Of a stretch of 33,000 nucleotides of DNA, positions 553 through 19,317 are shown piece after piece. The translations under genes were made by a program, and so were the position numbers. The notes beneath the pieces are model-generated. The model saw nothing but the letters and a program-made list of their open reading frames with translations. It searched no databases and was not told the origin of the DNA. Numbering within the stretch: the stretch's first letter is position 1; the number at the start of each line of letters is the position of its first letter. Source of the stretch: Botryllus schlosseri (Eukaryota); the NCBI GenBank assembly GCA_051294905.1, contig CM119376.1, positions 4,247,001 through 4,280,000 of the forward strand. The letters run 5' to 3'.

Positions 553-673
553 CTAGCAACCTTATACTTGATATAAAAACAAAAGCGGTATTCATTTCAA
601 TAATTCGCAGCATCAAAATATTGAGTTTGAAAACCGCCCGTACAGTCCAAGTTGTTCGCCGGTGGCTATACAC

Positions 674-2084
674 CAGTGGTCGGGAACCTTTTTCATCCGA
701 AGAGCCATATTGACCCTATATTTTCCATTTTAACTCCTAAAGAGCCATACATGCGAATCAGCTATTACGTCACAATTGAAAAATCGTGACGTAATCGTAG
801 GACAAATTCGAAATTACTAAATGGGATTCGTCGTTTGCACCTATTTCCTCGGTAAAAACTCGTAATAATCATGCTGATCGTCTTATTGGAGTAATGAGTA
901 TGCAAACTTGAGTTACATAGATCTTTTGCAAGTTATATATTTTTATTTGATTTGAACTGAGGGGCCGGTGATATTTTGTGAGGCTCAAGACAAGTAACAT
1001 TTAGAATTCCAACAGACGTAGACAACAGTAAAAGTATGAATATACTTTTTACACGCTTTTTACAGTTTATGCATCTTTTGATGTTGCATGCTGGTATTCC
1101 TTATGGCTTTGTAGTTTGGTTGATAATTGTTGTTCATACAAAATTTGAGACTTTCTTCAGTTATACGAGATCGTAGGCTCGTCTTGATGCTTCTCTTAAA
1201 TGCGAGGACCCATGGTGATATACGTAGGTTGAGCCAGACATGGTCACTATACAGCAGTATACATACCCACTGTAATGTGTGATGTGTCAGTGACGTGGGG
1301 TCAGGGGAGGCAGGTGACGCAGCGCCTCACCTACCTACCAGATTTCGAACATTTTTACTACCAAATTGTTCGAAAACACAGCGCGAAAGGTGAGGTATGG
1401 CATATGTGAGGCACGGCTGGGCCATGCCTTACCTTACCTGTGATAGCGCAATTCGTCGTAAATTTCATGGAACTTATAATAACTGATATTAATCGAATGT
1501 ATTTGTCGGACTGATTCCGATTCGATATCTCAATTTGGCGGTATTCGGCGGTATCATAACGTTGCGCCACTCGCCTATATTTTAACAGTTACTATAAAGC
1601 TACGTTGTCAATCAATAACATGGATGGCTAGGGCGTTGTTTATAGTTTGAACTTGTAATTGTGAATGTCTCTTCCACCCACGACAGTTCATTTCTCGCCG
1701 TAGATCAGGAAGAAAATGTGTATTTGTAAACTGCATTGTGATGAAGGCGCCGCCATGTCTCCTATAGTCTCTTTGATCAATCAACGTATCGTGCAATCCA
1801 GGATTTCGTGGCGGGTATATCGAAATCCGGTGTTATATTGGTCGCTGGTGATACAGTAGCTTAAATTTGTGGATTTTGAAAAGGGGGTCCGAGCCCCAAA
1901 CCCTTAATACGCTACTGTATAAACTTCTCATAGACATGTTTATACTACCAAAATAACAATTATACTGGTGGTACTGATGATTAAATAACAAGTTGCTGCA
2001 GTTTTGATAAATTAGGCACAAAAACAAAAAATTCGAAAAGAGCCATATCTTATGCCTAAAAGAGCCATAGGCTCCCGACCACTG
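674..2084. mobile_element. Non-autonomous hAT element containing nested element fragments
   Basis: TIRs CAGTGGTCGGGAACCT / AGGCTCCCGACCACTG (15/16). Flanking 8-mers ctatacac / ctatagac (7/8 TSD). Subterminal AGAGCCATA repeats. Internal hAT-like ends at 1288 (CAGTGACGTGGGGTCAGG) and 1917 (TACGCTACTG). Confidence 0.85.
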
Positions 2085-2640
2085 CTATAGACACTCCGTA
2101 AATATTATATATAAAATGTTTCTCAACCCAGACTGCAACGTCTCGCGACCCACTATTGACTAATCTCTGTTCTTCAACACGAATGCTGCCGATTTTCTGC
2201 TCTGGTATACAATTAATACGAAATTTGTATAATGACTATCTGCAACTGCGGGCAGTTCTTAAGCATACGCTATAGCCTTGGAGTCTCGCCTTCTTTAGTG
2301 AATAGATGCATTATTTGAATATATATCCAGCGTTCTATTTCGAACTTGAGCCATCCACGTTTAAAAATAGTTTCATTCGAAATTGATTCTTGGAACTTTG
2401 GTCTAATAGGTTATAGCCCTACACATGATTCTAAATTGGTGATCTTTGCCTATTTCGGGATATTCTACAGACAACATATTTAGTATATATTTTCAACATA
2501 GGTTAACTCTAAAAGCTGGTTCCTCGAACATTAAGTTGGGTGTGTATCAAACCTGGAGTGGTCGGTTCGTCATGTGCTGTACGGTGTTCGACTATATTCG
2601 TCATTTTACGTCAGCTTTCATTATGATTCCTGGTCTGCCG

Positions 2641-3068
2641 ATTTATTTACTCATGAAATCATGTTATGGTGCTCATAACAGCGTTGGTCTTTTGCACCAA
2701 TAGCCAAAAAATGTCACCAATTACACCTGCTAATTCAGTATAAGATATTCTCAGTAGAAAGTTAATAGTCAATAATTATATACGTTGTCCCTATAGGTAT
2801 AGCTACAAAATCGATTACGTGTTGTAAGATAACAGGGCCTGTAAATTAATTGTCCAAGTTGAATGGGATTTTCTTTTGCTATGCACTGCTTCTTAGTATC
2901 CGTCGGCGCTATTCCAGTATAAGACAGTCCATCAGAAAATGGCTGACGTCTTCGATGACTCCAGAATGGCACAAATAGCCGTCGCAGAAACCACTATTTT
3001 ATGGAGGTGTCCTAACTAACCTAACCGTAGGTTAGTTATCTATAGTCCATTCAATCCGCAGTGTCCCA
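2641..3068 (-). mobile_element. Degenerate 3' fragment of an I-group LINE (inverted copy of about 3825-4210)
   Basis: Reverse complement aligns to the plus-strand copy (cactgcggattgaatggac; aatcccattcaacttgga; tggtgcaaaagacc). The shifted-frame ORFs 2769-2972(-) and 3879-4088(+) are visibly homologous. A 32-bp insert lies at 3013-3044. Confidence 0.85.
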
Positions 3069-3570
3069 CTTTCGTCCAAAGCTTTTTAAGACATAGTGTA
3101 CGTGGATCAGATGGCGAGGAAGCGCCTAAATAAGCATAGGTAGGGAACGTACCAATGGGGCTGCATTGAAAACAAACATGTTTAATATCTGTTTTTGTGA
3201 TGATGTCACAAGTCTTCATTTATGACGTTACAGTGGATTAAAGTTGTTATATGGTTCTTTAGGATTTCCAACCCCTGTCCTAAACTAGGATTATCATACG
3301 TCCTTAATTTGTTATAGAAATTGAAAAGGTCCCCCGAGGACGCCCCACTGTCCTCCTTTTCGGTAATTCCTCCCCATTTATAGCCTTGACAGTCAGGCGA
3401 TTGTACTGGCACAACTAAAAACGCCACAAATTACGTGACATGTGGATTGCGACGGCTATGATGACTAAAAGAAGGTCAACAAAAACAAAAATTATGCTAG
3501 GGTGGGTCTTCCGTGGTCTTCTTTAGACAAAACATATTTTCCGTAAATATTTTAAAATAATCCTTTCTCT

Positions 3571-4223
3571 GTCAGAGGAAACGAAATTGCAGATCGACTT
3601 GCAAAAGAAGCCACAAACATTGCGCATGAAGTCACGACCGACGATCCACAGCTAACAGACGCGAAAGCCTTAATGTTCCATCATTGTAAGTCGATCTGGA
3701 ATGGGCAATACCAAAGTACTGACCAGGGAGCAACGTATCGTGAATACCGACCTAACGTCGACACGACAATTCCAAGACAAGTATCGCGAAGAAATGAATC
3801 CACGTTATTTCGGTTACGAACGGTACACTGCGGATTGAATGGACATCTCCACAGAATAGGAGTGTCTGCGACACCTCTTTGTGCACATTCTGGAGTTATC
3901 GAAGATGTGCGACATTTTTTGATGGATTTTCCGGCACTGGAACCACGCAGACAAATACTAAGAAACAGTGCACACCGAAAGCGAATCCCATTCAACTTGG
4001 AAAACTTATTGACGGACATCAATATATTACAACACGTGATCGACTTTGTAGCATCATCGTGGCGACGTATATAATTACCGTCATTTGACTTCCCAATGAG
4101 AATATCGTGTACTGAAATTGTTATGTAGCTTGTGTTATTGATGGAATTTATTGTCGTGTGGTGCATAAGACCACGTTGTTTTATGCACAATAACACAGTT
4201 TTAATAATAAATAATAATAATAA
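3571..4223 (+). mobile_element. 5'-truncated non-LTR retrotransposon (I/Nimb-like): end of RNase H, CCHC-like C-terminal domain, 3' UTR and (TAA)n tail
   Basis: In frame from 3571: VRGNEIADRLAKEA (RNase H C-terminal motif), then STLFRLRTVHCGLNGHLHRIG..LCAHSGVIEDVRHFLMD. Stop at 4074, 3' hairpin at 4161-4188, taa repeats at about 4201-4223. Confidence 0.9.
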
Positions 4224-4483
4224 TACCCCTTTTATCGTCCGATGTTATAAGTTTTTTGATTTTTAAGGAGTGTCCTCTTTTCCGTATCTCAGCATATGGT
4301 AACTCTATATACTTGAACGGACCAAAAATATATTTGTCCAGGACTACATCGCCATGCAGAATTTTTGCGGTTGGCAGTCATCGTCATCAAAACATCCATT
4401 CCGTTCCAGTTTTACTTAACTACGTGCTATAACTGTTGAACCGACGCCGATTTCTAGTGTTCTAATCATTCCATATCGCATAT

Positions 4484-4660
4484 AATATTTCGCTTCGAGT
4501 CTCGAGAGTCAATTCACGTATCTGAAACGCCGAGTCAAGTAAAGTAATTTTAGCAAAGTGAGTCGAAAAACTCAAGTCGTGCGAAAAAGTTGACTCGACT
4601 TGAGTTACTTCAACTGTAAAAACGAGACTGACTTAGGACTCGAAACCTGTGACTTCGTCA
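4484..4660. mobile_element. Fragment of the GACTCGAGTC-rich hAT MITE family
   Basis: Reverse complement of about 4490-4560 matches the left end of the 7459-8365 element (cactttgctaaaat..acttgactcggcgt). Confidence 0.7.
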
Positions 4661-4792
4661 CAACCGTAATAGAATTCAATAATGAAACAAAAATCAATGC
4701 CCACCCACCCACCTCTCCACGCTGTCTGCCAATTCATACGTATCCTATGTTCATAACTCGTTCATGCTATTATTATATTCTCATAAGATCAT

Positions 4793-5173
4793 TGGGGTTG
4801 CATTTAAAACCAACGGTGTTTTAAACAAGACCCTTTAACAAAATTGTGTTTTTTCAAGTTGTAAAATTATGCCATAATTGTGTAAATACTTTCCCAAAAA
4901 CGTGTTGTATGAGCCTACAGACAGTTATCACCCGATATACCCGAAGTATATCGATATGGGATGGTTGGAACCCTCAAAATAGTCGGTTCAACATTAATAA
5001 TACAGATATTTCGTCGAAGGAGCATTATTTACCCTATATTTTCAATTGTCCATGTCAATCCAGTATGACGTGACAATTGAATATTCGTGACGTCATTGCT
5101 AACAAAACAAAACAAAAAACATGTTTTAAATTAGGGCCTCGTTTTAAACATGTTTGTTTTAAATGCAACCCTA
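4793..5173. mobile_element. MITE with GGGTTGCATTTAAAAC terminal inverted repeats
   Basis: Perfect 16-bp TIR pair gggttgcatttaaaac / gttttaaatgcaaccc; the TSD is degenerate. Confidence 0.7.
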
Positions 5174-5875
5174 TGACCAATATATTGCGAAGCCTTCATC
5201 AGGATAGAGGAAGCGGGCGGTCCTCACTAAAACCATTTATGGCGTATTTACGGACAATTTGTTTTTAAAATGCGAAACGGGCGTCTCATTTACGTGGAAT
5301 ATTCCAAATATAAGGTATTATGGAACCAGACGGAAGTTATTTTCGGAATCCAAATTTCAAAATGGCGGTAATCATAGTGACCAAATTTGAAGCATGCGGG
5401 GTATCGTATAAAGATGTTTTATTTTCCCATAATGAATGAATAATATTTGCTTACGGTCCGAGGACCTATTCCTGGTAGAAAATGCATGATTCAAACCCAG
5501 GCACTGTCTCATGTACCACACTGAACTTTCAAAACCTAAGTCGACAGCCTTCAAGTGGTTGGCCGCAAGTGAAAATTCCCCCGGGTATCCGTGAAGTATG
5601 TCAGTCGAAAAGTTGCGGGAATCAGCGGAATTTCTTATCTTTCATGTCACTCGAGTTCGCAATACTGCAACCCGTAGCGAGGGCGGTTTGAACGCGTACG
5701 ATACAAAGAATTTCATTACCATAGATATATCTGGGATTCACATCTGCTGCTGTGTTGGCGTTATACTTGTAAGCCGGTTTCAACCTAGATTGATCATAGG
5801 CGTCATTCGAATCCAAACTTTTGTACGGGTCGGCGCAAATGGTTCTCACACGTCAAAAGACGATGGACTATGGAC

Positions 5876-6245
5876 CAGAGCTGGGCAACTATAATATTTT
5901 TAGATTTCTAAATTAGATTAGCAATAAAATTCTAGCTGCACGCTTTTTCTTAGAATTACTGATATCGTGAAAACTTGGAAATTGAATTCAATCAAATCAA
6001 ATTCAATTCGTACCAAATCATATTTCATTCTTATAAAGCAAGATATCGGCAAATATGGTAAATGGTCCGTCTGTAGCATTGTCATGGAAACCATAAACTA
6101 GATTAGAATTAAAATTAGAGCATAGAAACATTTCACAAACTAGATAAGGATTAGAATAAAGAAACATTTAAAAATTAGATTAGAGTTATATCACCGGCAT
6201 TGCACTATAGTTAGTCAATTAGAATTATCTGTTTGTCCAAGTCTG
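5876..6245. mobile_element. MITE, CAGACTTGG family
   Basis: Ends CAGAGCTGGGCAA / TGTCCAAGTCTG with ATTAG-rich interior; no clean 8-bp TSD at the termini. Confidence 0.65.
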
Positions 6246-6284
6246 CATAATATGGACCTGTATTAAAAGCACACACCCCTATGG

Positions 6285-6666
6285 TAGGCTTACCATACGT
6301 CCTCTTTTAAGAGGATTTGTCCTCTTTTTTGACTTTTTTGAAAGTGTCCTCGGAGGACGCCCTTTTGTCCTCTTTTTTGAGATTTTGTCCTCTTTTTTGA
6401 AAATTTAGGTCAGATTTAGAGTAAATTGCGAGTGATATGCCACAAATTAGCGCAGAAGTGAAGCTCCGGCGGGTATTTCGGAGGGCAAAGTGGTGATTTC
6501 AGCTCTGAGCGAAAAGAAGACCTTTTTTTTTTTTTTTTTTTTTTTAGTCAACCGTTCATGAAGCGGGTGAAATTTACCTGTTTTTGAGAATTCTTCTCCA
6601 GTTTTGCTTGTCTGAAATTTCTGAAAAAGTGTCCTCTTTTTTCATTTCCGAAATATGGTAAGCCTA
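6285..6666. mobile_element. hAT-type MITE, 382 bp, intact
   Basis: Perfect TIRs TAGGCTTACCATA / TATGGTAAGCCTA and a perfect 8-bp TSD CCCTATGG. Close sister copy at 32377-32767. Confidence 0.92.
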
Positions 6667-7389
6667 CCCTATGGTATGCACACAATAACAATTGCCATTG
6701 CTAACCACCACGCAAACGACGCTGTAAAGCACTGAATGAACTTTCTAAAAGCTATATGCCTCCGATCTGTCAATCCAACCTATCGATGGATTTCTGCAAG
6801 ACTACTTTTCAGGCATAGATGCGGACTCTGCTCGTGCGAAATTTCATCGTGATAAGACGAGGGTGTCCTAAATCTGATGGTGATGAATGAGTTTGTGTTT
6901 CCTGAATAGGAGTGAATTATATGGCTTTCCATGACAAGATTGTGGAACCAGTTCGAGACGAGAGCAATTAGAGACCAATTTGTTGTTTGTTGGAGTTGAC
7001 GCGTTCTCTAATGACGCCATGCCCTTTTCCACACCGCTTGCAAGAATTTATCAAACCACTGCTCTCCAACTCTCCGCGACTTTGTAAGCACTAATATTCA
7101 ATTCGCTCCTCCGGTAACAGTAAGCATTCGGCCTACCGCAAATACTCATGAAAGATAGAACAAATCCACAATCTCTTTCATTTGTGTTAGATTTTTCGCG
7201 TTGATAGGGTCATGCACTATAAATATTGCATGGTATAATATAATATGTCATACTTGGGACAGTATAGGGAGCTATTTTACAACGTAATGAGAACGCGACC
7301 AAGATGCAGTATGGGGCAATTGATATGTCCTTGTTGTTTGTGGTATTCATGGAGTTTGTCGACTACTATGGTCATTTACACCAAGCCAA

Positions 7390-8490
7390 TTTTCTTCATT
7401 TTTTCCGTAGCTGACGTCTTGTAGCACGGCCCACAGGCTTTTATAAGACATCGCATACCAGTGTTGGGATGACTCGAGTCATGACTTGACTCGAGTCACT
7501 TTGCTAAAATGACTTGACTCGGCGTGTCCGAAATGTGGATTGACTCGTGACTCGGAGCAAAATTCACGAGTCAATTTCAAGTCATCAAGTAATCGGTGTC
7601 GATAAAAATCACTGTATCTTGCATATGTTCGGATTGTTCGCGCAACATTGGTGTAACCCGTGAGAGCGACCAATCATTCAATGATCGTGCGTTTTACCGA
7701 GCCTACATTGTTCTCTCACAAATATATTGATCGCAAACGAAGTGATCGAAGCTTACAGCCAACGTTGTCGCAAACTATGATATAGTGAGGTATTTTAATA
7801 GCAAAATGTCCATTTCTGTTGTGTTCTTAACTCAACCAAACCTCTTGTTTTATTGAAATTATATTAGAAAATAGTTTATATAGTCCTCAACCATTGGCGC
7901 AGGCTCGAATTGTATCATATCAATTTGCAAAAGGGTAATGTATTGCATCTTATCAATTCGTTTCGCTATTCGTTATTTTGGCTGGTAACTATAAACTGAG
8001 GCTGTGCAATTACTTACGTAGTCTATTAGTTCTACTTAGATGTGAGCGATACAGCGCCTTACTTGCGTGCATATTTAACTCTATATTCGTTAATTGGTTC
8101 AAAATCAATGACCACTCAATCTGTATTTCAGACAGCAATCAAAATACAATGACGTAATCACGCCTCATACTTCTAAAAGGCAATTTGACTTGAATTGTGA
8201 CTTGACTCGTGACTTGACTTGACTCGAGTCACCTCCAAAAATCGAGTGACTTGACTTGACTCGAGTCACCTTCGAAAGTCGATTGACTTGACTTGACTCG
8301 AGTCAAAATGTGCAATGACTTGAAATGACTCGTGACTCGAAGGTAGTGACTTGATCCCAGCACCGCCGCGTACACGGACTGGATGGCGAGAAGGAGCCTA
8401 GTTACACCTCCAACACTTCGATAGGAATTCTAAAGCCGACCTCGGTTGGACTCGAACCCATTGGTGTTTCGGCCACTACGCTATCTCGCC
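7390..8490 (-). mobile_element. tRNA-derived SINE, interrupted by the 7459-8365 hAT element
   Basis: Minus strand: A box TAGCGTAGTGG (8483-8473), B box GGTTCGAGTCC (8458-8448). The body continues across the insertion to a 3' hairpin (7405-7429) and an A-rich tail. Confidence 0.7.
7459..8365. mobile_element. Non-autonomous hAT element with GACTTGACTCGAGTC subterminal repeats
   Basis: TIRs CAGTGTTGGGAT / ATCCCAGCACCG; flanks tcgcatac / ccgcgtac (6/8, differences are transitions). Internally deleted sister at 16111-16628. Confidence 0.88.
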
Positions 8491-10562: not shown

Positions 10563-10871
10563 TTGTAAACACCAAACTATTACCGTATGTTCCTGGATAA
10601 AATTGAATTCGTCGCATATCGATTTTCAATCACCGAAGAAAGGGTTGGTGTGATTATGTTCACAATAATATCAGTCTCAACGTTCACAATAAGATCAGTT
10701 ATGTTCGCAATAAACAACTCCCCACCCTCATGACTCTAACCCTTGATCGTGGACTTACCTTATTGTGAATATTATCGCGTCAACCTGTAGGATTCAGGTC
10801 CCTGCGATACATTATTTCGATCGAGTCTCATAGGTCGGCCACTGATCGCTTGTTTTTAGCACTTATTAGGG

Positions 10872-11069
10872 CTATCGGCGCTCACACTCGATGTCAGCAC
10901 AATTTGGAATGTCTAGTTGTGTTTTGCAACATATCCAATCCATTTGTGTCGACAGCAAAGCGTATCCTCTCCCAAGCGACAAGTCGCAGCTTTCATCTCC
11001 CCAATTCACGATGCCATACACCACCCAGCGGTGATGCTCCAAGCAAAATAATGGCGCGCCTGAAAATCC
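10872..11069 (-). CDS. Serine protease (S1A) exon 7, terminal, with catalytic Ser
   Basis: cgaaag|GFSGAPLFCLEHHRWVVYGIVNWGDESCDLSLGRGYALLSTQMDWICCKTQLDIPNCADIECERR*. 198 nt, phase 0, continues ...DVPCK from exon 6. Confidence 0.9.
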   Translation of the reverse strand, partial: GFSGAPLFCLEHHRWVVYGIVNWGDESCDLSLGRGYALLSTQMDWICCKTQLDIPNCADIECERR

Positions 11070-11203
11070 CTTTCGAAAGATATGTAAGAATTAAACGCTC
11101 CGCGACAGGTATCGAGAAAAGATAACAATTACCCGTACCAAAGAGATATGCACATGAGCGGACCGGTAATCGCACGAACGACATTATTAAGACAAGCCTA
11201 CAT

Positions 11204-11956
11204 CATGGGCGGCCAACCCAACCCATGGCCCGCAAGGTAATTGCCGAAATTAGTAATATGTAAAAAAAAATCAATTATCCAGGTAATTTATTATGAGCTT
11301 GCAAAGGCAACCAAAAATTTGATTAGCCTGATCGCGAAATTTAGGATGTTGATGACTGAGGCATCAGTTATACGACACATAGGCGTAGCCACGGGCCACC
11401 CACAATTTACTTCGATCTTCGTATATGACCATAAAGTACAGTAAATCAAGACATATTTATTGGACTTGAAATTTTTCTCAGCACTCCGCTCGATTTCTGG
11501 CTTTTAGTATGGGTAACCCAAATACGATCAGAATACTGAAGTGAGCCTAACTATAATCGCAATTACGAGAGAACGTGTCGTCCAACATGCGACTTCGCGA
11601 CTGCACTGGCAGAAAGTTCGTCAGCGATAAAACCTTTGTCGAAGCGCCGAATTAATCCTGTCCTTGCCAAATGAGCGTAGCGGTTGACAAAGGCGACCCA
11701 CAATATATGCAAGTAACAATATTATCGACCAAATTCATTCATTAACTTTGAATATTTTTCCTTTAGAGCAGCTAGGAGATTTCATGAAATAATAGTTATT
11801 GATTTTGATGCGCAGTAAGTCTTTTTTCACCGTTAACTAATCCTTTTCACTCTTATCGGACGACTAAAAAGGTCATCAACATTCAAGTGGCACGCGCAAT
11901 GGTTCGTATATCGTATGTGGCCCACTGGCCGAGAAGGTTGGCCCTGGCCACTCCTG
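11204..11956. mobile_element. Non-autonomous hAT element in protease intron 6
   Basis: Ends CATGGGCGGCCAACC / GGTTGGCCCTGGCCACTCCTG; subterminal TGGCCC motifs; flanks gcctacat / tcctaaat (6/8). Confidence 0.65.
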
Positions 11957-12016
11957 TCCTAAATCAATTGCTATCGCAATCTTGTGGTGTATTGATTTTA
12001 TTTAAATTTTAATAAA

Positions 12017-12310
12017 ATGATGATGATGATGATGAATGATGAATGGCTATCAGTGGTTCACTGAGCCAGTCTCAGGGTTCCACTGCAGGGCGGGACACAC
12101 TCAATCCTTACATATAATATGCAGGGCGGGACACACTCAATCCTTCCATACAATATGTGATAACACGAAATCGAATCCCTTCATTCTGAAATGCCGGATC
12201 TCCAATATTTATCAGCTCATTTGCAAACAGGCAACTTTTATCATGCTGTTGCGTTTCGTCCGAACAAAACGAAGGCACTTTCTGAGGAGAAGTCTCGTAT
12301 TTCTAACTGT
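12017..12310 (-). mobile_element. 3' end of a LINE (L2/Daphne/Crack-like) with (CAT)n tail
   Basis: (CAT)n microsatellite tail, a 3' hairpin CAGTGG..CTGAG..CTCAG..CCACTG (12051-12085), an upstream peptide RNTR...RTKRNSMI resembling LINE ORF2 C-termini, and a 36-bp-period internal duplication (12085/12121). The clade call is tentative. Confidence 0.55.
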
Positions 12311-13105
12311 CTCTGAAGAGGTATAGCTGACGGCTGACTGGTTTGCAATTAATATAGATTATGTTTTCGTACTGGGTGAAACTCATAGTTTAATTGTGTT
12401 GTTCCTAAGACCTTGTAGACGTAGGCCTGCAGCTCATTTTGTGCACCAGTAATGTATTAGATGTGTGGTGAGATGTGTAATATGGTAGACTTTCGTTTTT
12501 GAGACTGGAAAGTTCGGGCCCCCGAAGGCTCGCGGATTAGCGTTAGGGTTCGTCGGGTTATCAAAGGTGAGGAACCACTGACCAAAATTATTGTCGTGAG
12601 ACGAATTCGCAGCCATGTGCTTTCTTACAGAAACACAAAATGTTTGGAAATAAATCGTACTCTTAAGAGAACCCAAAAGATGGTACACGATAAAAGAACC
12701 TCTCAGAATTAAGTAGGCCTAACCCGGTTCTGGGGCCGCCATCGAATAGTCCACCGGACTTGTAAGAGACTGGACAGTATTCCCTTATTTCTGTGTTTAA
12801 TTTAATTACTATACGGTTTTAGCATATCATCATTATCAGTCGGCGTTTGTCGTTCTCTGTTATTCAATCGCTATAGCTTGGTTCTTCTGGTTGATTCATA
12901 TTGTAATGTAAATCATTATTGTTATAAACCCTGCGCGCATAGTTTCGTACGTTATCCCTTCGTACTCCATTTGTGTTTATTCCAATCTGTCAAGCATCAT
13001 TTGGATGAAAATGCCGTGTTAGATTTATAGCGCGGTACGAATCTGAGTCTGTTTTCGTGCATCACATTTTGGGTGTGTATCTTCTCGCTCAGAGTTTATA
13101 CTTAC

Positions 13106-13249
13106 TTTGCAAGGAACATCGAGTGGAATCCCTTGCGAGTCATTTCTGACAGGCCTTGTGCTTTTGATCTTGTCACAGATATTGTAATTAACGTCGTACT
13201 TCATTCGTTTGTACCTCCTTTGGCAGGATGTCGGATCCTCCAACTCTAC
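13106..13249 (-). CDS. Serine protease exon 6
   Basis: ttcaag|VELEDPTSCQRRYKRMKYDVNYNICDKIKSTRPVRNDSQGIPLDVPCK|gtaagt. 144 nt, phase 0-0, contains the Cys168/182/191 equivalents. Confidence 0.88.
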
Positions 13250-13318
13250 CTTGAATCCCAGGAATCGCGAGTTTGACGGTGCTGAATGCGTGTAATTGAA
13301 GGTATGATGGGTGCTTAC

Positions 13319-13483
13319 GTTTAATGCAATATACTGAAGCTTGTGTTTACCTAGAATGTTTTCGTTTTCTTCCGCTTTTGAGATCACGCCCCACCCACCA
13401 TAATAACAGGTTCGGCTTTCCATCGGTACTACGTTGGGGTTTGGTAGACAAACTGGATTTTCGTGATATCTCAGTAACGGAAC
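13319..13483 (-). CDS. Serine protease exon 5
   Basis: aatag|VPLLRYHENPVCLPNPNVVPMESRTCYYGGWGVISKAEENENILGKHKLQYIALN|gtaagc. 165 nt, phase 0-0, with PVCLP and GWG motifs. Confidence 0.9.
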
Positions 13484-13550
13484 CTATTCACAAAAAGGCA
13501 ATTCGCCATATAGTTCAGGTCAAAGTTCACGATCGACAATATGTCGTCAC

Positions 13551-14410
13551 CAGAGGTGGTCAGTAAAGAAGTACTTCTACTTTTTTTAAGTACTCAAGTA
13601 GTTTTCGCTACTTGGGTACTTACTCAAGTAGATCTAATTTACCGCTACTTCGACTTCGTAATATTTCGTGATCTACCTACTTACATTTCGCTATTTTCAG
13701 TTAGTCGAGTAGAAGTAGTTTAATCCTCTAATCAGGAAGATAGCCTGAGGAATTTCGGGGCTGTTTTCACTGAGTATCAACATAAAAGTTGAGTAACGCC
13801 CAGAATTTTCGTCGCGCTTCGCGCACAGTGGATATGGAGTAACCAATATGATTTCACGAAAGTATCGGTGACTATAACTAAAATAGCGCGTTGCGTGGTT
13901 CCGTTCACACAGCATTGTCGCCCATATGAAATATTTTAACACCGTAAGCCTACATATGGCCCATCATAACGTTTGAAAGTGATGTTTCGCAATCTAGCAT
14001 TTACTTATCGTATCGTAATCTAGCAGTCCATGGCGTGTCCTAATCTGGAAAAGTGGTCTCCGACTTCATTTTAGCTTTAGTTCTGATTTAGCATACCGTC
14101 TTCGAAACTTTCTGGGCAAAAGACATGGAATACATTTTCCGCATTTAGAAGTAGTATTTATATTTCTTTTTCATTTCCCAGTATCGTACTTTGAGTTCGA
14201 ATTAGTTTCAGTTCCTTTGTATAGAGGACATACATATCATACAGCAACTAATACAGAGATGTAACTTACAAATTTTCTCATTACACACTGTACTGATTAC
14301 AAGCACACACATTCTCACTACTAGTAAACATTGGTTAGAAACGAAATTTAGGAAGTAGTGAAATAGCATATATGTCTAGTCTATATGCATTTACTCAAGT
14401 ATTCGAGGAC
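13551..14410. mobile_element. Degenerate hAT-type element with TACTCAAGTA repeats, protease intron 4
   Basis: Left end CAGAGGTGG followed by repeated TACTCAAGTA; the same motif recurs near 14390-14400. The right TIR is not seen. Confidence 0.5.
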
Positions 14411-14479
14411 TAGAACATGCAGTCTTTCTTAATCATTTGTTTAAAGATATCTTTCAAAGCAATTGTTTTGGTAATACAG

Positions 14480-14660
14480 AAGTTGGAGTCGGAGTCAGGG
14501 TCCTTTACGCAAACTCCGACTCCAGTCAGTATTTTTTCCACGACTCCGACTCCAGCCACTATAGTTTTCACGAATCCGGCTCCAAGGCGTGCTAAAAGAG
14601 ACTCCGACTCCAGCAAGCGAGAATTAGCCGAACTCCGACTACACCGACTCCACAGCCCTG
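14480..14660. mobile_element. Right end of a hAT MITE with ACTCCGACTCC repeats
   Basis: Repeated ACTCCGACTCC units ending in GACTCCACAGCCCTG; explains the spurious ORFs 14410-14667 and 14417-14722. Confidence 0.7.
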
Positions 14661-14936
14661 TCAGCAAGTTATATAGATGTCAGTCGCAGTTGTGTCTGGA
14701 CTTTCCTTTCATGCCTAAATAATTGATCCAGCAGATCGCTGTGATTTCGACAATTTATAAATTTAATACTGCAGTCGTATCCGCTTAATTTGGGCACCGT
14801 ATAACCTGGACATGATACAAAATTGCAGTACAAAGAAAGGGTATAGTAAGGACTCTCACGTACGGGTTGGTTAACCCTACAGATCAAGCACCACCGCGAC
14901 ATACAGTAAGGGAAGTGAAGGGGTTCAAATTCTTAC

Positions 14937-15120
14937 CGACAATCTCAACAAAGCGATGTCATTCTTTTTCACGGCGCTGTCGTACGCTGGATGCAAAAAC
15001 AGCTCTTTAATCTCCGCGAAAGAATCAGTAATTCCTCTCACAACTTCCCAGTCGGGACGACCGCGAATAACCACTCTTTGTTGCCAAACATGATATGCAT
15101 TATGTAAGCCAACCGTCCAA
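14937..15120 (-). CDS. Serine protease exon 4, with catalytic Asp
   Basis: gtaaag|T-WTVGLHNAYHVWQQRVVIRGRPDWEVVRGITDSFAEIKELFLHPAYDSAVKKNDIALLRLS|gtaaga. 184 nt, phase 2-0, missed by the ORF track. Confidence 0.9.
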
Positions 15121-15136
15121 CTTTACGCGAGATGAT

Positions 15137-15593
15137 CAGACTTGTGCAAACTAATGGTTTTAGTATAGTGCTAGATCTAGTTCTGGTTCGGATTTTTGAA
15201 AAGTGAGTAGTTCTAATTGCGTAATATTTCGAAAAGCCAGTATAGTTCTAATTCTACTTCTAGGTGTCCATTAACACAAATTAGTTGCCAAACAACTAGA
15301 AAACACGTGTCGACGGTTATCGTGAATCGCGATACCGCTGCTTCAGTTCTTGCAGTCACGTATACTAGAGGCGTATAGGCAGAGGGTGGGTACTGGGTAT
15401 GGGGTCGGAACCCCGTCCCTTTGAAATGCGAATTTTATATCCAGTATTAATTAGCTAATTTGCACATCAGTAATTGTAGTTGCTTCGGAATTGAATTTAG
15501 TTGTGTTGTGTTGTAGTTAGTTAGTTGCGGTCGTTAGTTCTAGTTCTAGTTCTAGTTGCACATTTTGAGAATTCAGTAGTTTGCCCAAGTCTG
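15137..15593. mobile_element. MITE (CAGACTTGG family) filling most of protease intron 3
   Basis: TIRs CAGACTTGTGCAAACTA / TAGTTTGCCCAAGTCTG; flanks gagatgat / gatattat (6/8); nested GC-rich fragment at about 15365-15430. Confidence 0.8.
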
Positions 15594-15607
15594 GATATTA
15601 TACTTAC

Positions 15608-15845
15608 TTCAAATACCTATTGTCGTTCACGCAATGCAAGGCCGTTAGTCCCCAACGCGAGCTTATCATAGCTCCCCCACAAATACTTAGGACTCGCCTT
15701 ATTTTCGTAACGTTGTTTCGGAGAAGATAGTTCCTTTCTGCTAATTTCGCGATGGATAATGAGGTCTCGGATTTGTTGGGATTGAGAATCGCAATACTTA
15801 TCATCCAATGCGGGACTAGAGCATAGATAGATACGATTAGTGATC
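15608..15845 (-). CDS. Serine protease exon 3, with catalytic His
   Basis: atcag|GSLIVSIYALVPHWMISIAIL...ICGGAMISSRWGLTALHCVNDNRYL|gtaagt. 238 nt, phase 1-2. In-phase alternatives exist: acceptor at 15815, donor at 15617. Confidence 0.85.
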
Positions 15846-15888
15846 CTGATATATGCATAAAGCAACTGATATTCCGATAAAGATTTAC

Positions 15889-16017
15889 CTCTAGGCAGCT
15901 TCTTTATTGACACATCACCGCAGTTGTACCGTAAATATCTCGCTTCTTTGCGATCTGGCTCGGTGAGCCTTGCTTCATCCATTTTGGGCAACGCGCCGAA
16001 GTAGAAATCAATGACTT
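15889..16017 (-). CDS. Serine protease exon 2 (pro-region with the Cys1 equivalent)
   Basis: gttcag|EVIDFYFGALPKMDEARLTEPDRKEARYLRYNCGDVSIKKLPR-G|gtaaat. 129 nt, phase 1-1. Confidence 0.78.
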
Positions 16018-16110
16018 CTGAACAGCATATATGAATGCATACGAACGGATTTTGTCTCAACGAAGAACTTGGTATGGTTCTTTTAATTGGTACTACTCAG
16101 GCATAATTAT

Positions 16111-16628
16111 CAGTGTTGGGTTGACTCGAGTCATGACTTACAGCTTAGGTTGTCGTAAACTAGTAGTAAAGAAATTTAATAGCAAAATGTATCAATTTGT
16201 AAAGGGGTATGTATTGCATCTTATCAATTCGTTTCTCTATTCTCTATTCTCTATTTTGGCTGGTAACTATAAACTGAGGCTATGCAATTACTTACGTAGT
16301 TCAGCAGTTCTACATATATGTGGGCGATACAGCGCCTTCTTGCGTGTACATTTAACTCTTTATACGTTCATCGGTTCGGAATCAATTACCAATCAATCTG
16401 TATTTCAGACAGCTCGCAAAATGCAATGACGTAATCATGCCTCATACTTTGAAAAGGCAACTTGACTTGACTTGACTCGACTTGACTCGAGTCACCTCCA
16501 AAAATCGAGTGACTTGACTTGACTCGAGTCACCTTCGAAAATCGATTGAATTGACTTGACTCGAGTCAAAATGTGCACTGACTCGAATTGACTCGTGACT
16601 CGAAGGTAGTGATTTGATCCCAACACTG
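16111..16628. mobile_element. hAT MITE, deletion derivative of the 7459-8365 element
   Basis: TIRs CAGTGTTGGG / CCCAACACTG; perfect TSD ATAATTAT; interior matches about 7780-8365. Confidence 0.93.
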
Positions 16629-16636
16629 ATAATTAT

Positions 16637-18323
16637 TAGGGATGGTGTGGACGTGAGGTTCACGTTCGCGTTCTGTGTGTGAGCCTCAGGCGTTTAGAGA
16701 TTCCAGTTCACAAACGAACCTTGGTAAATTCTGCACTGTGGACCGTTTTCATAGATTGCTATATCAGGTCATTATAACATCTTTGGTTGACATTCTTTGC
16801 ATTTCAACTTCGGCCCACTCTATGCATGGCGCTGGCAGCACAATAAAATCAACAATAAACGAGCATATGCACCATCCCAATCTCGAAACTTTTACTTTCT
16901 TTGTTACAAAAGCTTGCTCGAAATAGCCAGTTTTACGCTTGTGAATATTTAGTGACTCTCTGCTGTCCGCTTGACCCGCAATCACACAACATCAAGAGCG
17001 AAATACGCTACATGTAAGTATAGTCAGTGAATGGTGTTTATTCATTATATATTCAACCAATCAATAAAATTTATGTAAAGAACACAGCGTTGTCTAATGT
17101 AACAGATCTAGCAGGAGTATACGGGATCAATCTTGATTTGATATGTAGCCTATATTGTACCATAAAACCAAATCCGTGCGATTGCGGTGTTGGCTACTGT
17201 ATAAACTTGTTAATGGAGTAATAGAGTATAGCAAGTATAGAAACCCGTTTTACGCTCTGCTTAATATTAATATAGCAATAGTCAGACGCCCAATACATTA
17301 TCCGGTCTGGCTTAGACAGTTAAGGCGCTAGCGAACTTGAACCTTTCAGAGGTTCACACTAGGGATGGTGTGATCCTCTGAAAGGTTCAGGTTCGTGTGA
17401 ACGCGAACCTCATGGCGTCATATTGATAAGTCCCACCCTAAATTTCCGTGAAGTGATAGCCTATATTATTGTACACGATGCCTAGCGACGATTCGGGCCA
17501 CATAATGCCAGAATGCTGAAGTACATATTGACGTTTCAAACGTCGCCAAATGTATCAACTGGGTCAATCAAATGATATAATAATCCCATAAAATCAATAT
17601 CTTGCGTCGCTTTGCCAACTATTTCGACGAGGACTTGCAAGGGGATATAAGCTTACGCCTTAACGGCCTGGGCCAGACCGGACAATGTATTCGGCATCTG
17701 AGTATTGCTACGTTGATATTGATCACAGCATAAAACGGGTTTCTATACTTGCTACCGATATTATACCCGTAAACGTTATACAGCAGTAGCCAAGCCAACA
17801 CACCAATCGCACGGATTTGATTTTTATGATACAATAAACATATGAAATCAAGATTAACCCCGTACGCCTGCTAGATTTTTTACATCACACAACGACATTA
17901 ATTTCATTGAAATGGTTGAATAAGCATCATTCGCTGACTACATATTTCGATCCGGATGTTGTGTGATTGCGGGTCAAGCTCACAGCAGCGGGTAACCGAA
18001 TAATCACAATCGGAAAGCTGGAGATATCGAGCAAACTTTTGTATCAAAGTTAATATATTTTAGATTGTCATGGTGCATGCTCGTTTAGTGTTGATATTTT
18101 TATGCTACCAGCGCCATGCATAGAGTGACCCGCAGTTGAAATAAATTTCAATCAACGATGTTATAATGAAATCAAAATTGTAACGTATCGAAAAGGTTCA
18201 CAGTGCAGCTGCAGAACCTTCCAAGGTTCGTTTGTGAATGTGAACCTCTAAATTTCTGAGGTTCACACACAGACGCGAACGTGTACCTCATGTTCACACC
18301 CACCCTGGTTCACACCATCGCTT
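16637..18323. mobile_element. hAT element A (TAGGGATGGTGTG family), its right TIR split by element B
   Basis: Left TIR TAGGGATGGTGTGGAC at 16637. The right TIR reads GTTCACAC (17352-17359), then element B, then GTTCACAC-CATCGCTT (18308-18323). Confidence 0.75.
17360..18307. mobile_element. hAT element B, same family as A, opposite orientation
   Basis: TIRs TAGGGATGGTGTGATC / GTTCACACCCACCCTG; perfect 8-bp TSD GTTCACAC; reverse complement of about 17660-18307 aligns with 16637-17330. Confidence 0.85.
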
Positions 18324-18455
18324 TATTACTGATAGCTCTGAATAAGCTAGCAAATTAGCCCAAGTGTTCCCCGGGTTAGCAAAGATTATTATATTCGCGA
18401 CTCCTACACATCTACAAATAATCTTTTATATCGTGAACGGTCCGTGGACAGTGGA

Positions 18456-18728
18456 CATATGAGCATGCGACATTATGGCATGCGACAATTGGACATATGA
18501 CACATGAGCATATGGGTTAAATTTAGGTTAGGGGTGGGTTAGGGTTGAATTTAGGCTTGGGATAGGGTAAGGCTTGGGGTTAGGATTTATAAAGCGGTTC
18601 ATCCCAGGGTTATGTTTCGGGTTAGGGTTGGTTTTGGGGTTATAAAGTCACATGCTGAAGTGACGCATGCTAAAGTGTGACATGCTCAATTGTCGTTTTC
18701 CATTGTATCGCATGCTCATGCTCATATG
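18456..18728. repeat. MITE-like element with inverted ends and a degenerate (TTAGGG)-like core
   Basis: Ends CATATGAGCATGCGA / TCGCATGCTCA(TGCTCA)TATG; interior about 18514-18640 made of GGGTTAGGG/TTAGG-like units. Confidence 0.65.
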
Positions 18729-19205
18729 GCGGGCAACCATCATGAACTTGTTAGTTTTGATGAGTATACCGACGGGTTTGGCCAGAAGAATTGAGAATAT
18801 ACTCGTCAGATAGCTGATCAGTGGTCACATGTATTGATGTTGGACATTGATGAAACTAGCAACGTGTCAGTGCAGACAAGTTCGATGAGTAGGCGATTCC
18901 CATGAAACTCATATACCATACAGAGTTCTGTTTCTTCTAGTGACGCTACGGCAGTCACCAGAGTGAGTTGCAAAGTGAGCCTACCGACACACTGGCAAAC
19001 TGGCATGCTAGCTTATTGGGAGATTTAAACGTCACAACGCCAGTGCTTACTAGTTTCCAACCTGAAGAGTCGAGCGCGTCTTCTTTACCGGGAGAGAAGG
19101 CTTCGATATTATTCCCTTGACTCTTCTGATGCATTGCGACTATACACACTGATAGAAATAAGTTGGTTTGTCATCCACGTACCACGATAATATACCTGAC
19201 CTGAC

Positions 19206-19317
19206 CTGAGACAACAGAAACCACCAGTGCAGTAAGCATAAGGACTCCAACAACACGAAGCGATGTCGTTCTGGGGCGGATGTATTTGTTCATCTTCACT
19301 ATTCGGTTCACTTCCAT
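19206..19317 (-). CDS. Serine protease exon 1 (signal peptide or type II signal-anchor)
   Basis: MEVNRIVKMNKYIRPRTTSLRVVGVLMLTALVVSVVS-G|gtcagg. 112 nt, basic N-terminus then a hydrophobic stretch; the phase 1 donor matches exon 2. The joined CDS is 1170 nt (389 aa) with no internal stop. Confidence 0.7.

What the first reader, a model, noticed from the sequence alone, without database searches (positions are those of the whole stretch)
10872..19317. Serine protease with an intact triad but no canonical zymogen-activation switch
Seen: His (TALHC), Asp (NDIALL) and Ser (CKGFSGAP) are present, along with Cys pairs equivalent to 1-122, 42-58, 136-201, 168-182 and 191-220. However, Asp194 is Phe, Gly197 is Ala, Ser214 is Asn (IVNWG), residue 189 is Val, and R-IVGG is replaced by KKLPRGSLIVSI. 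Known: S1A activation needs the new Ile16 N-terminus to pair with Asp194; complement factor B and C2 are exceptions that use other mechanisms. Inference: joint loss of both partners with a retained triad points to a non-canonical activation route (single-chain or cofactor-driven) or a triad-retaining pseudoenzyme, with non-tryptic S1 specificity. This is the strongest protein-level novelty in the window.
Basis: partly seen in the sequence, partly recalled or inferred. Interest (0 to 1): 0.75.

Follow-up and report, generated by a model that had tools for sequence, protein, structure and literature searches.

The report
Switch-less membrane serine protease homologue
This is a real, transcribed gene for a trypsin-like protease domain that keeps its catalytic His-Asp-Ser but has lost both halves of the usual "cleave-to-activate" switch. 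The same loss is conserved in three other sea-squirt species, so it is a small undescribed family and not a decaying copy, and it resembles the recently described vertebrate pseudoprotease PRSS23.

Summary
The core observation holds. A minus-strand multi-exon gene (about 10872-16017, possibly up to 19317) encodes an S1A domain. It has His57, Asp102, Ser195 and five canonical cysteine pairs, but Phe at 194, Ala197, Asn214 and no Arg-IVGG.

Two details need correcting. A 69-nt intron removes 23 codons in the fourth protease-domain exon. The 5' exon at 19317 is unverified.

Orthologues in Clavelina lepadiformis, Ciona intestinalis and C. savignyi keep the triad and Gly193, have Leu or Phe at 194 and Asn214, and have no basic P1 or IVGG. 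They are type II membrane proteins. A sister paralogue in the same genome has the same stem motif and intron positions but canonical K|IVGG and GDSGGP. All 39 other readable S1 active-site exons sampled from this genome have Asp194.

The best reading is an ascidian-specific, membrane-tethered, single-chain S1A domain that cannot be activated by cleavage. It is either PRSS23-like (catalytically silent, about 0.45) or constitutively active with a hydrophobic residue 194 filling the Ile16 pocket (about 0.35). I class it as a new variant of a known kind, with moderate interest.

The parts
19195..19317 (-). Candidate first coding exon: ATG at 19317-19315, a short basic N-terminus, then a hydrophobic stretch of about 20 residues (signal anchor). 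Several possible GT donors lie at about 19206-19195.
   Evidence: Sequence read. Orthologues are type II membrane proteins, so such an exon is expected. There is no RNA or homology support here. Unverified.
15889..16017 (-). Exon A: stem/pro-region with the conserved motif FG.LP.M...RLTEP...A.YL.Y.CG, Cys1, then DVSIKKLPR and the first base of a split codon (phase 1).
   Evidence: The donor at 15889/15888 is confirmed by an X1 contig joint. The acceptor (cag at 16018) is inferred. It is 58% identical to Clavelina over 36 aa. Only one other gene in the genome has this motif.
15816..15888 (-). 73-nt GT..AG intron. The ancestral acceptor (cag at 15846) lies inside it.
   Evidence: Joint 15815->15889 in an X1 contig of 188 nt. 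Spacing compared with Clavelina, Ciona and the canonical paralogue.
15617..15815 (-). Exon B: Pro28-His-Trp, a long 37-loop insertion, Cys42, TALHC with the His57 codon at 15636-15634 and Cys58. It ends in phase 2.
   Evidence: Acceptor confirmed by RNA. Pfam Trypsin 21.9 bits, above the cut-off. The donor ag|gtattt is inferred, at the same place and phase as in the paralogue.
14937..15075 (-). Exon C with the Asp102 codon at 14960-14958 (NDIALLRLS).
   Evidence: Trypsin E 0.025. Both junctions are inferred. One X1 contig (14805-15098) is unspliced across both.
13351..13483 (-). Exon D1: Cys122 (PVCLP), Cys136, Gly-Trp-Gly, with an aromatic Tyr at 138.
   Evidence: The donor at 13351/13350 is confirmed by an X1 contig joint.
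13282..13350 (-). 69-nt in-frame GT..AG intron with no stop codon, so it reads as coding. It lies at the same place as an intron of the Clavelina gene.
   Evidence: Joint 13281->13351. Clavelina exon map.
13106..13281 (-). Exon D2: Cys168, Cys182, an extended 186-loop, Val189, Cys191-Lys192. Phase-0 donor AAA|gtaagt.
   Evidence: 53-65% identity to fragments P0004 and P0006, both of which also end at CK|gt. The same intron position is seen in Clavelina and in the paralogue.
10872..11069 (-). Last exon: Gly193, Phe194 (11066-11064), Ser195 (11063-11061), Gly196, Ala197, Pro198, Cys201, Asn214 (11006-11004), Trp215, Gly216, Cys220, GRGYALLST, a Cys-rich tail WICC..C..C, and the stop codon at 10874-10872.
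   Evidence: 61% identity to Clavelina and 66% to C. savignyi. X1 and X2 contigs cover 10801-11001 and run on into the 3' UTR. The acceptor aaag|GGA is inferred from frame and from the conserved intron position.

Best explanation
The gene encodes the local member of a small, apparently tunicate-restricted family of membrane-anchored S1A (chymotrypsin-fold) domains. The anchor topology is type II in the orthologues and only inferred here. The family arose by duplication of a canonical K|IVGG / GDSGGP protease that still sits elsewhere in the genome.

In this family both partners of the Ile16-Asp194 activation switch were dismantled before the ascidian radiation. Residue 194 became a bulky hydrophobic (Phe or Leu). 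The P1 Lys/Arg and IVGG were lost, and His40 is absent. In this species a shifted splice acceptor has additionally removed residues 17-27. The protein is therefore made as a single chain that no cleavage can switch on.

By analogy with vertebrate PRSS23, the only such protein tested so far, I think it most likely acts as a catalytically silent or nearly silent protease-fold module held at the cell surface. It would work by binding a partner through its conserved pseudo-active-site cleft.

Shown: the gene structure in part, transcription, conservation, and origin from a canonical sister gene. Inferred: membrane topology in this species, lack of activity, and a binding function.
For: Motifs and reading frame. 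Spliced transcripts.

Orthologues P0002/P0008 (Clavelina), P0009 (C. intestinalis) and P0005+P0010 (C. savignyi) have His57, Asp102, Gly193, Ser195 and Asn214 invariant. Residue 194 is L/F/F. The segment between Cys1 and Pro28 has canonical length but reads T-LGLY, ET-GRY or E-IGRY instead of K/R-IVGG.

The tree is (paralogue,(ours,(Clavelina,(Ciona,Ciona)))).

The sister paralogue on G000:C2 has the same stem motif and all five intron positions and phases, but splices to QGK|IVGGEN and QCR|GDSGGP. Only these two genes in the genome carry the stem motif.

All 39 readable S1 active-site exons sampled elsewhere in the genome have Asp194.

Precedent: PRSS23 keeps the triad, has Ala194 and no Ile16, and these changes are conserved across vertebrates. 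It shows no probe labelling or peptidase activity, and its function survives Ser-to-Ala mutation. The authors state that all known non-canonical activations still need an acidic residue at 194 (PMC13194640).

The AlphaFold2 model of the Ciona domain is a confident chymotrypsin fold (pTM 0.86; best PDB match chymotrypsinogen, E 2e-17). DSSP marks a helix over residues 187-194, which in my recollection of solved S1 structures is not helical, at only moderate confidence.
Against: The triad, Gly193 and the most conserved exon (the one with the active-site Ser, 61-66% identity against 37-43% overall) have been kept across deeply diverged, fast-evolving ascidians. Only 29% of aligned columns are invariant. 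That pattern is what one expects of a working enzyme.

The orthologues keep an acidic residue at 189. Residue 194 is always bulky and hydrophobic, not small as in PRSS23, which suggests a structural role. No activity data exist for any member. The PRSS23 analogy rests on one protein that is not shown to be related beyond the S1 fold.
Confidence: 0.45

Rival explanations
1. It is a constitutively active, zymogen-free single-chain protease. The uncharged bulky Phe/Leu194, helped by the aromatic residue at 138 that all four family members share, buries itself in the hydrophobic Ile16 pocket. That would hold the 193-195 backbone (the oxyanion hole) in the active orientation without any N-terminal insertion. 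Control would then come from membrane tethering, expression or inhibitors, not from cleavage.
For: His57, Asp102, Ser195 and Gly193 are invariant, as are the Cys42-58 and Cys191-220 pairs. The active-site exon is the best conserved part. Residue 194 is F/F/F/L and never small or polar. Residue 138 is Y/Y/F/F, against Val in the canonical paralogue. Glu or Asp at 189 in the three orthologues fits a working S1 pocket. This species can drop residues 17-27 altogether, which makes sense if the N-terminal segment no longer has a job. From memory and not checked here: neutralising Asp194 raises the activity of trypsinogen (Hedstrom laboratory).
Against: No active S1A enzyme without an acidic residue at 194 is known (PMC13194640). 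The one natural case tested, PRSS23, is inactive. The orthologues have Ser216. An Arg at 225 or 226 (GRGY) may obstruct S1. This copy has Val189. The pocket-filling idea could not be inspected because the tools return no model coordinates.
Confidence: 0.35
2. The family is functional in other ascidians, but this species' copy is drifting towards a pseudogene. It would be poorly spliced, weakly expressed and under relaxed constraint.
For: The ancestral acceptor was lost and 10 residues deleted. There are large lineage-specific insertions (37-loop, after Gly-Trp-Gly, 186-loop). It has Val189 where the orthologues have an acidic residue. One X1 contig is unspliced across the Asp102 exon (14937-15075), and intronic contigs are present. 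Two bulk RNA-seq runs gave no exon reads. The 5' exons were not found by homology.
Against: The reading frame is open across six exon segments (323 codons) with consensus splice sites. All catalytic and cysteine positions are kept. In run X2, 0 of 8 differences from the reference fall in the 137 coding bases covered, against 8 in 257 non-coding bases (roughly p 0.03 by my count). The branch is long, but not out of line for the earliest-branching species.
Confidence: 0.12
3. It is a gene-model artefact: the real mRNA uses other exons and restores a canonical protease.
For: Three junctions and the 5' end rest on inference. A stronger-looking acceptor (ttttcag at 11059) lies 10 nt inside the last exon.
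Against: The two junctions seen in RNA move the protein further from canonical. Using the 11059 acceptor with the AAA|gt donor shifts the frame into a stop. The CK|G intron position and phase are shared with Clavelina, the paralogue and fragments P0004 and P0006. The window holds no other trypsin-like exon. Independent gene models in three species give the same features.
Confidence: 0.03

Closest known systems
PRSS23 (and its paralogue PRSS35), vertebrate secreted S1 'pseudoprotease' (PMC13194640, J Biol Chem 2026)
   Same: S1 domain with the His-Asp-Ser triad retained. A non-acidic residue at 194, no Ile/Val16 N-terminus and no His40. All of this is conserved across orthologues.
   Different: PRSS23 has Ala194 where this family has Phe or Leu. 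PRSS23 is secreted after prodomain removal, whereas this family is membrane-anchored. Here the loss can be traced to a duplication of a canonical ascidian protease, so it looks independent.
Type II transmembrane serine proteases (enteropeptidase light chain 1ekb, TMPRSS2 7xyd): the best solved-structure sequence matches
   Same: N-terminal signal anchor in the orthologues, a C-terminal S1A domain, a Cys1-Cys122 link to the stem, and the best PDB sequence hits (E about 5e-15 to 3e-14).
   Different: No Arg/Lys-IVGG activation site and no Asp194. No recognised stem domain (SEA, LDLa, SRCR or CUB); Pfam finds only Trypsin. The match is weak (about 58 bits).
Canonical sister paralogue in the same genome (G000:C2, about 7738940-7741100; locus L010)
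   Same: The same RLTEP...Y..Y.CG stem motif, identical intron positions and phases, a long 37-loop, Asn214, and the WICC...C...C tail.
   Different: The paralogue keeps Lys15|Ile16-Val-Gly-Gly, Asp194 (GDSGGP), Gly226 and Val138. It is only 33-36% identical to the switch-less clade.
Single-chain tPA, and complement C2a / factor B
   Same: S1A enzymes that are active, or partly active, without insertion of a new Ile16 N-terminus.
   Different: As summarised in PMC13194640, single-chain tPA (Lys156-Asp194) and C2a (Glu194-Arg) still rely on an acidic residue at 194. This family has no acid at 194 and no Lys at 156.

Membership tests
Peptidase S1A / Pfam PF00089 Trypsin (chymotrypsin fold) | Profile match to PF00089 | tested here: met
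   The exon with His57 (15617-15815) scores 21.9 bits against a cut-off of 20.6. The exons with Asp102 and Ser195 match at E 0.025 and 0.0049. All orthologues carry PF00089.
Peptidase S1A / Pfam PF00089 Trypsin (chymotrypsin fold) | Catalytic triad His57, Asp102, Ser195, plus oxyanion-hole Gly193 | tested here: met
   TALHC, NDIALL and KGFSG are present. These residues are invariant in four species.
Peptidase S1A / Pfam PF00089 Trypsin (chymotrypsin fold) | Two-barrel chymotrypsin fold | tested here: met
   Tested on the Ciona orthologue only. AlphaFold2 gives pLDDT 84 and pTM 0.86. Foldseek's best match is chymotrypsinogen 2cga, E 2.4e-17, TM 0.78. This species' spliced protein could not be submitted by reference.
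Peptidase S1A / Pfam PF00089 Trypsin (chymotrypsin fold) | Ile16-Asp194 zymogen activation switch (basic P1, I/V16-V-G-G, Asp194) | tested here: not met
   Phe194 is present. There is no IVGG in either splice form. The orthologues have Leu or Phe at 194 and Thr or Glu before a degenerate segment.
Type II transmembrane serine proteases | N-terminal signal anchor | tested here: inconclusive
   The three orthologues have a hydrophobic stretch of about 22 residues at roughly positions 30-75 and no signal peptide (read). In this window a candidate exists at 19317-19195, but it is unsupported by RNA or homology.
Type II transmembrane serine proteases | Activation cleavage at Arg/Lys-IVGG, with a disulfide holding the two chains together | tested here: not met
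   The Cys1 and Cys122 equivalents are present, but there is no cleavage motif.
Type II transmembrane serine proteases | Recognised stem domain(s) (SEA, LDLa, SRCR, CUB, etc.) | tested here: not met
   Pfam finds nothing in the stem exon or in upstream open frames. The orthologues list only PF00089.
PRSS23/PRSS35-type switch-less S1 pseudoproteases | Triad kept while residue 194 is non-acidic and no Ile16 N-terminus can form | tested here: met
   The definition is taken from PMC13194640.
PRSS23/PRSS35-type switch-less S1 pseudoproteases | Orthology or close sequence kinship to PRSS23 | not tested
Indirect evidence is against kinship: the nearest relative is a canonical ascidian paralogue, and protein searches returned only ascidian proteins.
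PRSS23/PRSS35-type switch-less S1 pseudoproteases | No serine-hydrolase activity | not testable with these tools
   This needs probe labelling or substrate assays.

The most novel reading that the evidence does not exclude
Ascidians have evolved an S1A protease that needs no zymogen step. A bulky hydrophobic residue at 194, together with an aromatic residue at 138, plugs the Ile16 pocket from within. The single-chain, membrane-tethered enzyme would then be permanently in the active conformation, and one lineage has been able to delete residues 17-27 outright. This would be the first active S1A enzyme with no acidic residue at 194.
Probability: 0.3. Interest if true: 0.75.

Novelty: new variant of a known kind. 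Interest (0 to 1): 0.5.

Why it matters
The Ile16-Asp194 ion pair is treated as near-universal for S1A proteases. PRSS23 was recently put forward as a distinct example of a triad-retaining member that has dismantled it.

This family is probably a second, independent case, and it is arguably more tractable. It has a canonical sister gene for direct comparison. Residue 194 is a conserved bulky hydrophobic, not Ala. There is a natural variant lacking the whole 17-27 segment. Orthologues exist in Ciona, where knock-outs and expression studies are routine.

Either outcome is informative. An active enzyme would overturn the rule that an acid at 194 is required. An inactive one would show that conserved 'intact triads' recur in pseudoproteases and mislead annotation; these proteins are currently labelled 'mastin-like' and 'chymotrypsin B-like'.

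Tried and rejected
- **Bulk RNA-seq:** raw reads from runs X8 and X12 (6% and 13% of each run sampled) gave no exon reads, only repeat hits. This says little about expression.
- **Calls used up:** Read laying and the look-up of sequencing runs were exhausted, so the junctions on either side of the Asp102 exon (14937-15075), the junction into the last exon, and the 5' exons could not be checked.
- **My own error:** an off-by-one join of the last two exons gave 'CKGAP'. It was corrected.
- **Alternative acceptor at 11059 (ttttcag):** rejected. With the AAA|gt donor it frameshifts into a stop, and the CK|G intron position is conserved.
- **Alternative GTAAGC donor inside the fourth protease-domain exon (13106-13483):** I first favoured it, then rejected it in favour of the RNA-observed 13350-13282 intron.
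- **5' stem and anchor exons:** tblastn with orthologue N-termini and a small HMM of the stem found nothing convincing between 16018 and 24000. Pfam on upstream open frames found nothing.
- **Representative search with the fourth protease-domain exon (13109-13483, read through the 69-nt intron):** the top hits P0001 and P0003 are FN3-repeat proteins. They match the stretch spanning the Gly-Trp-Gly region and the intron-encoded residues through many repeated short segments. I judged them spurious.
- **Encoding contigs:** The look-up of encoding contigs had no record for P0002 and no DNA for P0004.
- **ESM Atlas:** returned only generic trypsin clusters.
- **Literature:** searches found no description of this ascidian family.
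- **Arg in GRGY:** the register is ambiguous (225 or 226), so I make no claim of granzyme-B-like specificity.
- **Neighbouring open frames in the window:** no Pfam match.

Full report
**What is there.** The window is eukaryotic DNA of about 40% GC, from contig C6 of a 495.5-Mb assembly. On the minus strand, between about 16017 and 10872, open segments carry the hallmarks of an S1A protease domain:
- TALHC (His57; 15645-15631)
- NDIALL (Asp102; 14963-14946)
- PVCLP and CYYGGWG
- CK|GFSGAPLFC (Phe194-Ser195; 11069-11058)
- IVNWG (Asn214; 11012-10998)

Assembled with consensus splice sites, these give one uninterrupted frame of 323 codons ending at the stop at 10874-10872. The cysteines for pairs 1-122, 42-58, 136-201, 168-182 and 191-220 are all in place. 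A further four lie in a C-terminal tail (WICC..C..C). Single exons hit Pfam Trypsin. No other trypsin-like exon is in the window.

**Transcript evidence and corrections.** No run is on record as an RNA holder. However, Logan contigs of run X1 contain two joints whose skipped parts begin GT and end AG on the gene's strand.
- Joint 15889->15815 skips 73 nt. It shows that the exon ending KKLPR plus one base joins directly to the base before CCG-CAT-TGG.
- Joint 13351->13281 skips 69 nt. It removes 23 stop-free codons that look like coding sequence.

X1 also holds an unspliced contig across the Asp102 exon (14937-15075) and intronic contigs, so much of the signal is unprocessed RNA at low depth (3-7). 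Two bulk RNA-seq runs, sampled at 6% and 13%, gave no exon reads. The junctions on either side of the Asp102 exon (14937-15075) and the junction into the last exon are inferred, and so is the 5' end. It is plausible but unsupported.

**Relatives.** A full-library phmmer search with the fourth protease-domain exon (13109-13483) found very few proteins. The real hits are:
- a Clavelina lepadiformis protein (P0002/P0008, annotated 'mastin-like')
- a Ciona savignyi model (P0005)
- two short unnamed fragments (P0004, P0006)

A profile search added Ciona intestinalis P0009 ('chymotrypsin B-like') and the other half of the C. savignyi gene (P0010). The organism is therefore very probably an ascidian.

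All three orthologues share these features:
- a hydrophobic anchor near the N-terminus and a short stem ending in the motif FG.LP.M...RLTEP...A.YL.Y.CG
- His57 (TARHC), Asp102, Gly193 and Ser195
- Leu (Clavelina) or Phe (both Ciona) at 194
- Asn214-Trp215
- GRGYAL after Cys220

Between Cys1 and Pro28 they have the canonical number of residues. The activation site, however, reads FT-LGLY, ET-GRY or E-IGRY, with no basic P1 and no IVGG. His40 is absent.

Overall identity to this gene is 37-43%. In the last exon, which carries Ser195, it is 61-66%. Only 29% of columns are invariant across the four species, yet the triad and Gly193 all are.

**Origin.** The genome holds exactly one other gene with the stem motif, on contig C2. 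I assembled it from locus L010. It has introns at the same five positions and phases, a long 37-loop, Asn214 and the WICC tail. It splices to ...SIMQGK|IVGGENAVSHAWPW, TAAHC, FDVALL and QCR|GDSGGP, so it is a fully canonical zymogen. It is 33-36% identical to every member of the switch-less clade and roots the tree as (paralogue,(ours,(Clavelina,(C. intestinalis, C. savignyi)))). The switch was therefore dismantled once, after a duplication and before the ascidian lineages split, and has been kept since.

As a control, I sampled 40 of the best-scoring S1 active-site exons elsewhere in this genome. Thirty-nine were readable and all have Asp194: 38 GDSGG and one GDYGG. The sample is biased to canonical sequences.

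**Gene structure comparison.** The Clavelina gene (locus L009) and the paralogue both have a phase-1 intron in the Gly18 codon. It is followed by 9-10 residues before Pro28. In this species it would leave an intron of only 43 nt, whereas the other small introns seen in these genes are about 55-105 nt. The RNA uses the next AG, 30 nt downstream. The skipped codons also lack the Tyr and Phe that the orthologues conserve in this segment. This lineage has therefore lost residues 17-27 in addition to the switch. The 69-nt intron and the CK|G (192/193, phase 0) intron coincide with Clavelina introns. That supports both the RNA joint and the inferred last junction. The stronger-looking acceptor at 11059 would frameshift into a stop.

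**Structure.** The spliced protein of this window cannot be given by reference, so I folded the C. intestinalis domain with a small family alignment. The model has pLDDT 84 and pTM 0.86. Its best PDB matches are chymotrypsinogen, chymotrypsin, elastase and plasma kallikrein (E about 1e-17 to 1e-16, TM about 0.78). The degenerate 16-27 segment is modelled with confidence (block pLDDT 89). DSSP marks a helix over residues 187-194, which in my recollection of solved S1 structures is not helical, at moderate confidence. Coordinates are not returned, so the oxyanion hole and the Ile16 pocket could not be inspected. By sequence, the closest solved structures are enteropeptidase, tPA, HGFA, plasma kallikrein and TMPRSS2, at only about 58 bits.

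**How it probably works.** What is shown is that no cleavage can create an Ile16 N-terminus and no carboxylate at 194 could receive one. The protein must therefore function as a single chain.

The literature offers one tested precedent, vertebrate PRSS23. It keeps the triad, has Ala194 and lacks Ile16 and His40, and these features are conserved across orthologues. It shows no probe labelling or peptidase activity and keeps its cellular function after Ser-to-Ala mutation. The authors note that every known non-canonical activation still uses an acidic 194 (PMC13194640). On that base rate I favour a PRSS23-like, catalytically silent or very weak, surface-tethered binding module (about 0.45).

The rival is a constitutively active enzyme in which Phe/Leu194 and the clade-specific aromatic at 138 fill the Ile16 pocket from within (about 0.35). 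Several observations support it: the strict retention of the triad and Gly193, the high conservation of the active-site exon, the acidic 189 in the orthologues, and the fact that residue 194 is always bulky and hydrophobic. A drifting local copy (about 0.12) and a model artefact (about 0.03) are less likely. The frame is open, and in run X2 all eight differences from the reference fall outside the coding bases it covers.

**Novelty.** The proteins exist in databases under generic names, but I found no description of this feature or family. The kind of protein (triad kept, switch gone) is now known from PRSS23. This is a separate and probably independent ascidian lineage, with a different residue at 194, a membrane anchor and a canonical sister gene. 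I rate it a new variant of a known kind, of moderate interest. It becomes high interest only if activity is demonstrated.

Noticed in passing
window 16672-17332 and 17651-18273: A large inverted repeat with arms of about 620-660 nt, seen as four collinear segments 82-88% complementary around a loop of about 318 nt. It lies upstream of the stem exon (15889-16017), in the presumed intron. Positions 16400-16800 have depths in the thousands to tens of thousands in all runs, so it is a high-copy foldback or transposon-like element.
   Followed up: partly
window 13401-14200: A second high-copy repeat, in the intron between the Asp102 exon (14937-15075) and the next exon downstream (13351-13483). Contig depth is 600-8000 in X1 and X2, with many loose ends. 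It abuts the start of the exon at 13483.
   Followed up: no
G000:C2:7738940-7741100 (locus L010 7640-9803): The canonical sister gene of the finding. It has the same RLTEP stem motif and intron positions but K|IVGG, TAAHC and GDSGGP. Its residue 189 is Met, and it also has Asn214 and Lys156.
   Followed up: yes
G000:C10 15.37-15.60 Mb, 26.36-26.37 Mb and 27.86 Mb (loci L001, L003-L007): A cluster of S1 genes whose last exon starts inside the Ser195 codon (phase 2: ..|SGGP or SGSP). They share the C-terminal W[IF]CC...P.C...C tail with the finding. This is a wider ascidian subfamily with an extra Cys-rich tail.
   Followed up: partly
G000:C9:8383110-8383277 (locus L050): An S1 active-site exon reading GDYGGP (Ser195 replaced by Tyr, Asp194 kept). 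This is a conventional triad-mutant protease homologue in the same genome.
   Followed up: no
window 13109-13483 (minus), translated through the 69-nt intron: The stretch GWGVISKAEENENIL plus the intron-encoded residues resembles a repeated motif (..SWGVVSELDQNGVILSYTVTYEAL..) of FN3-repeat proteins P0001 and P0003. The E-values are inflated by 5-13 repeated matches. It is probably chance.
   Followed up: partly
window 10801-11255: Run X2 differs from the reference at 10847, 10856 and 10863 (3' UTR) and at 11113, 11121, 11155 and 11188 (intron), but nowhere in the coding part of the last exon that it covers.
   Followed up: partly
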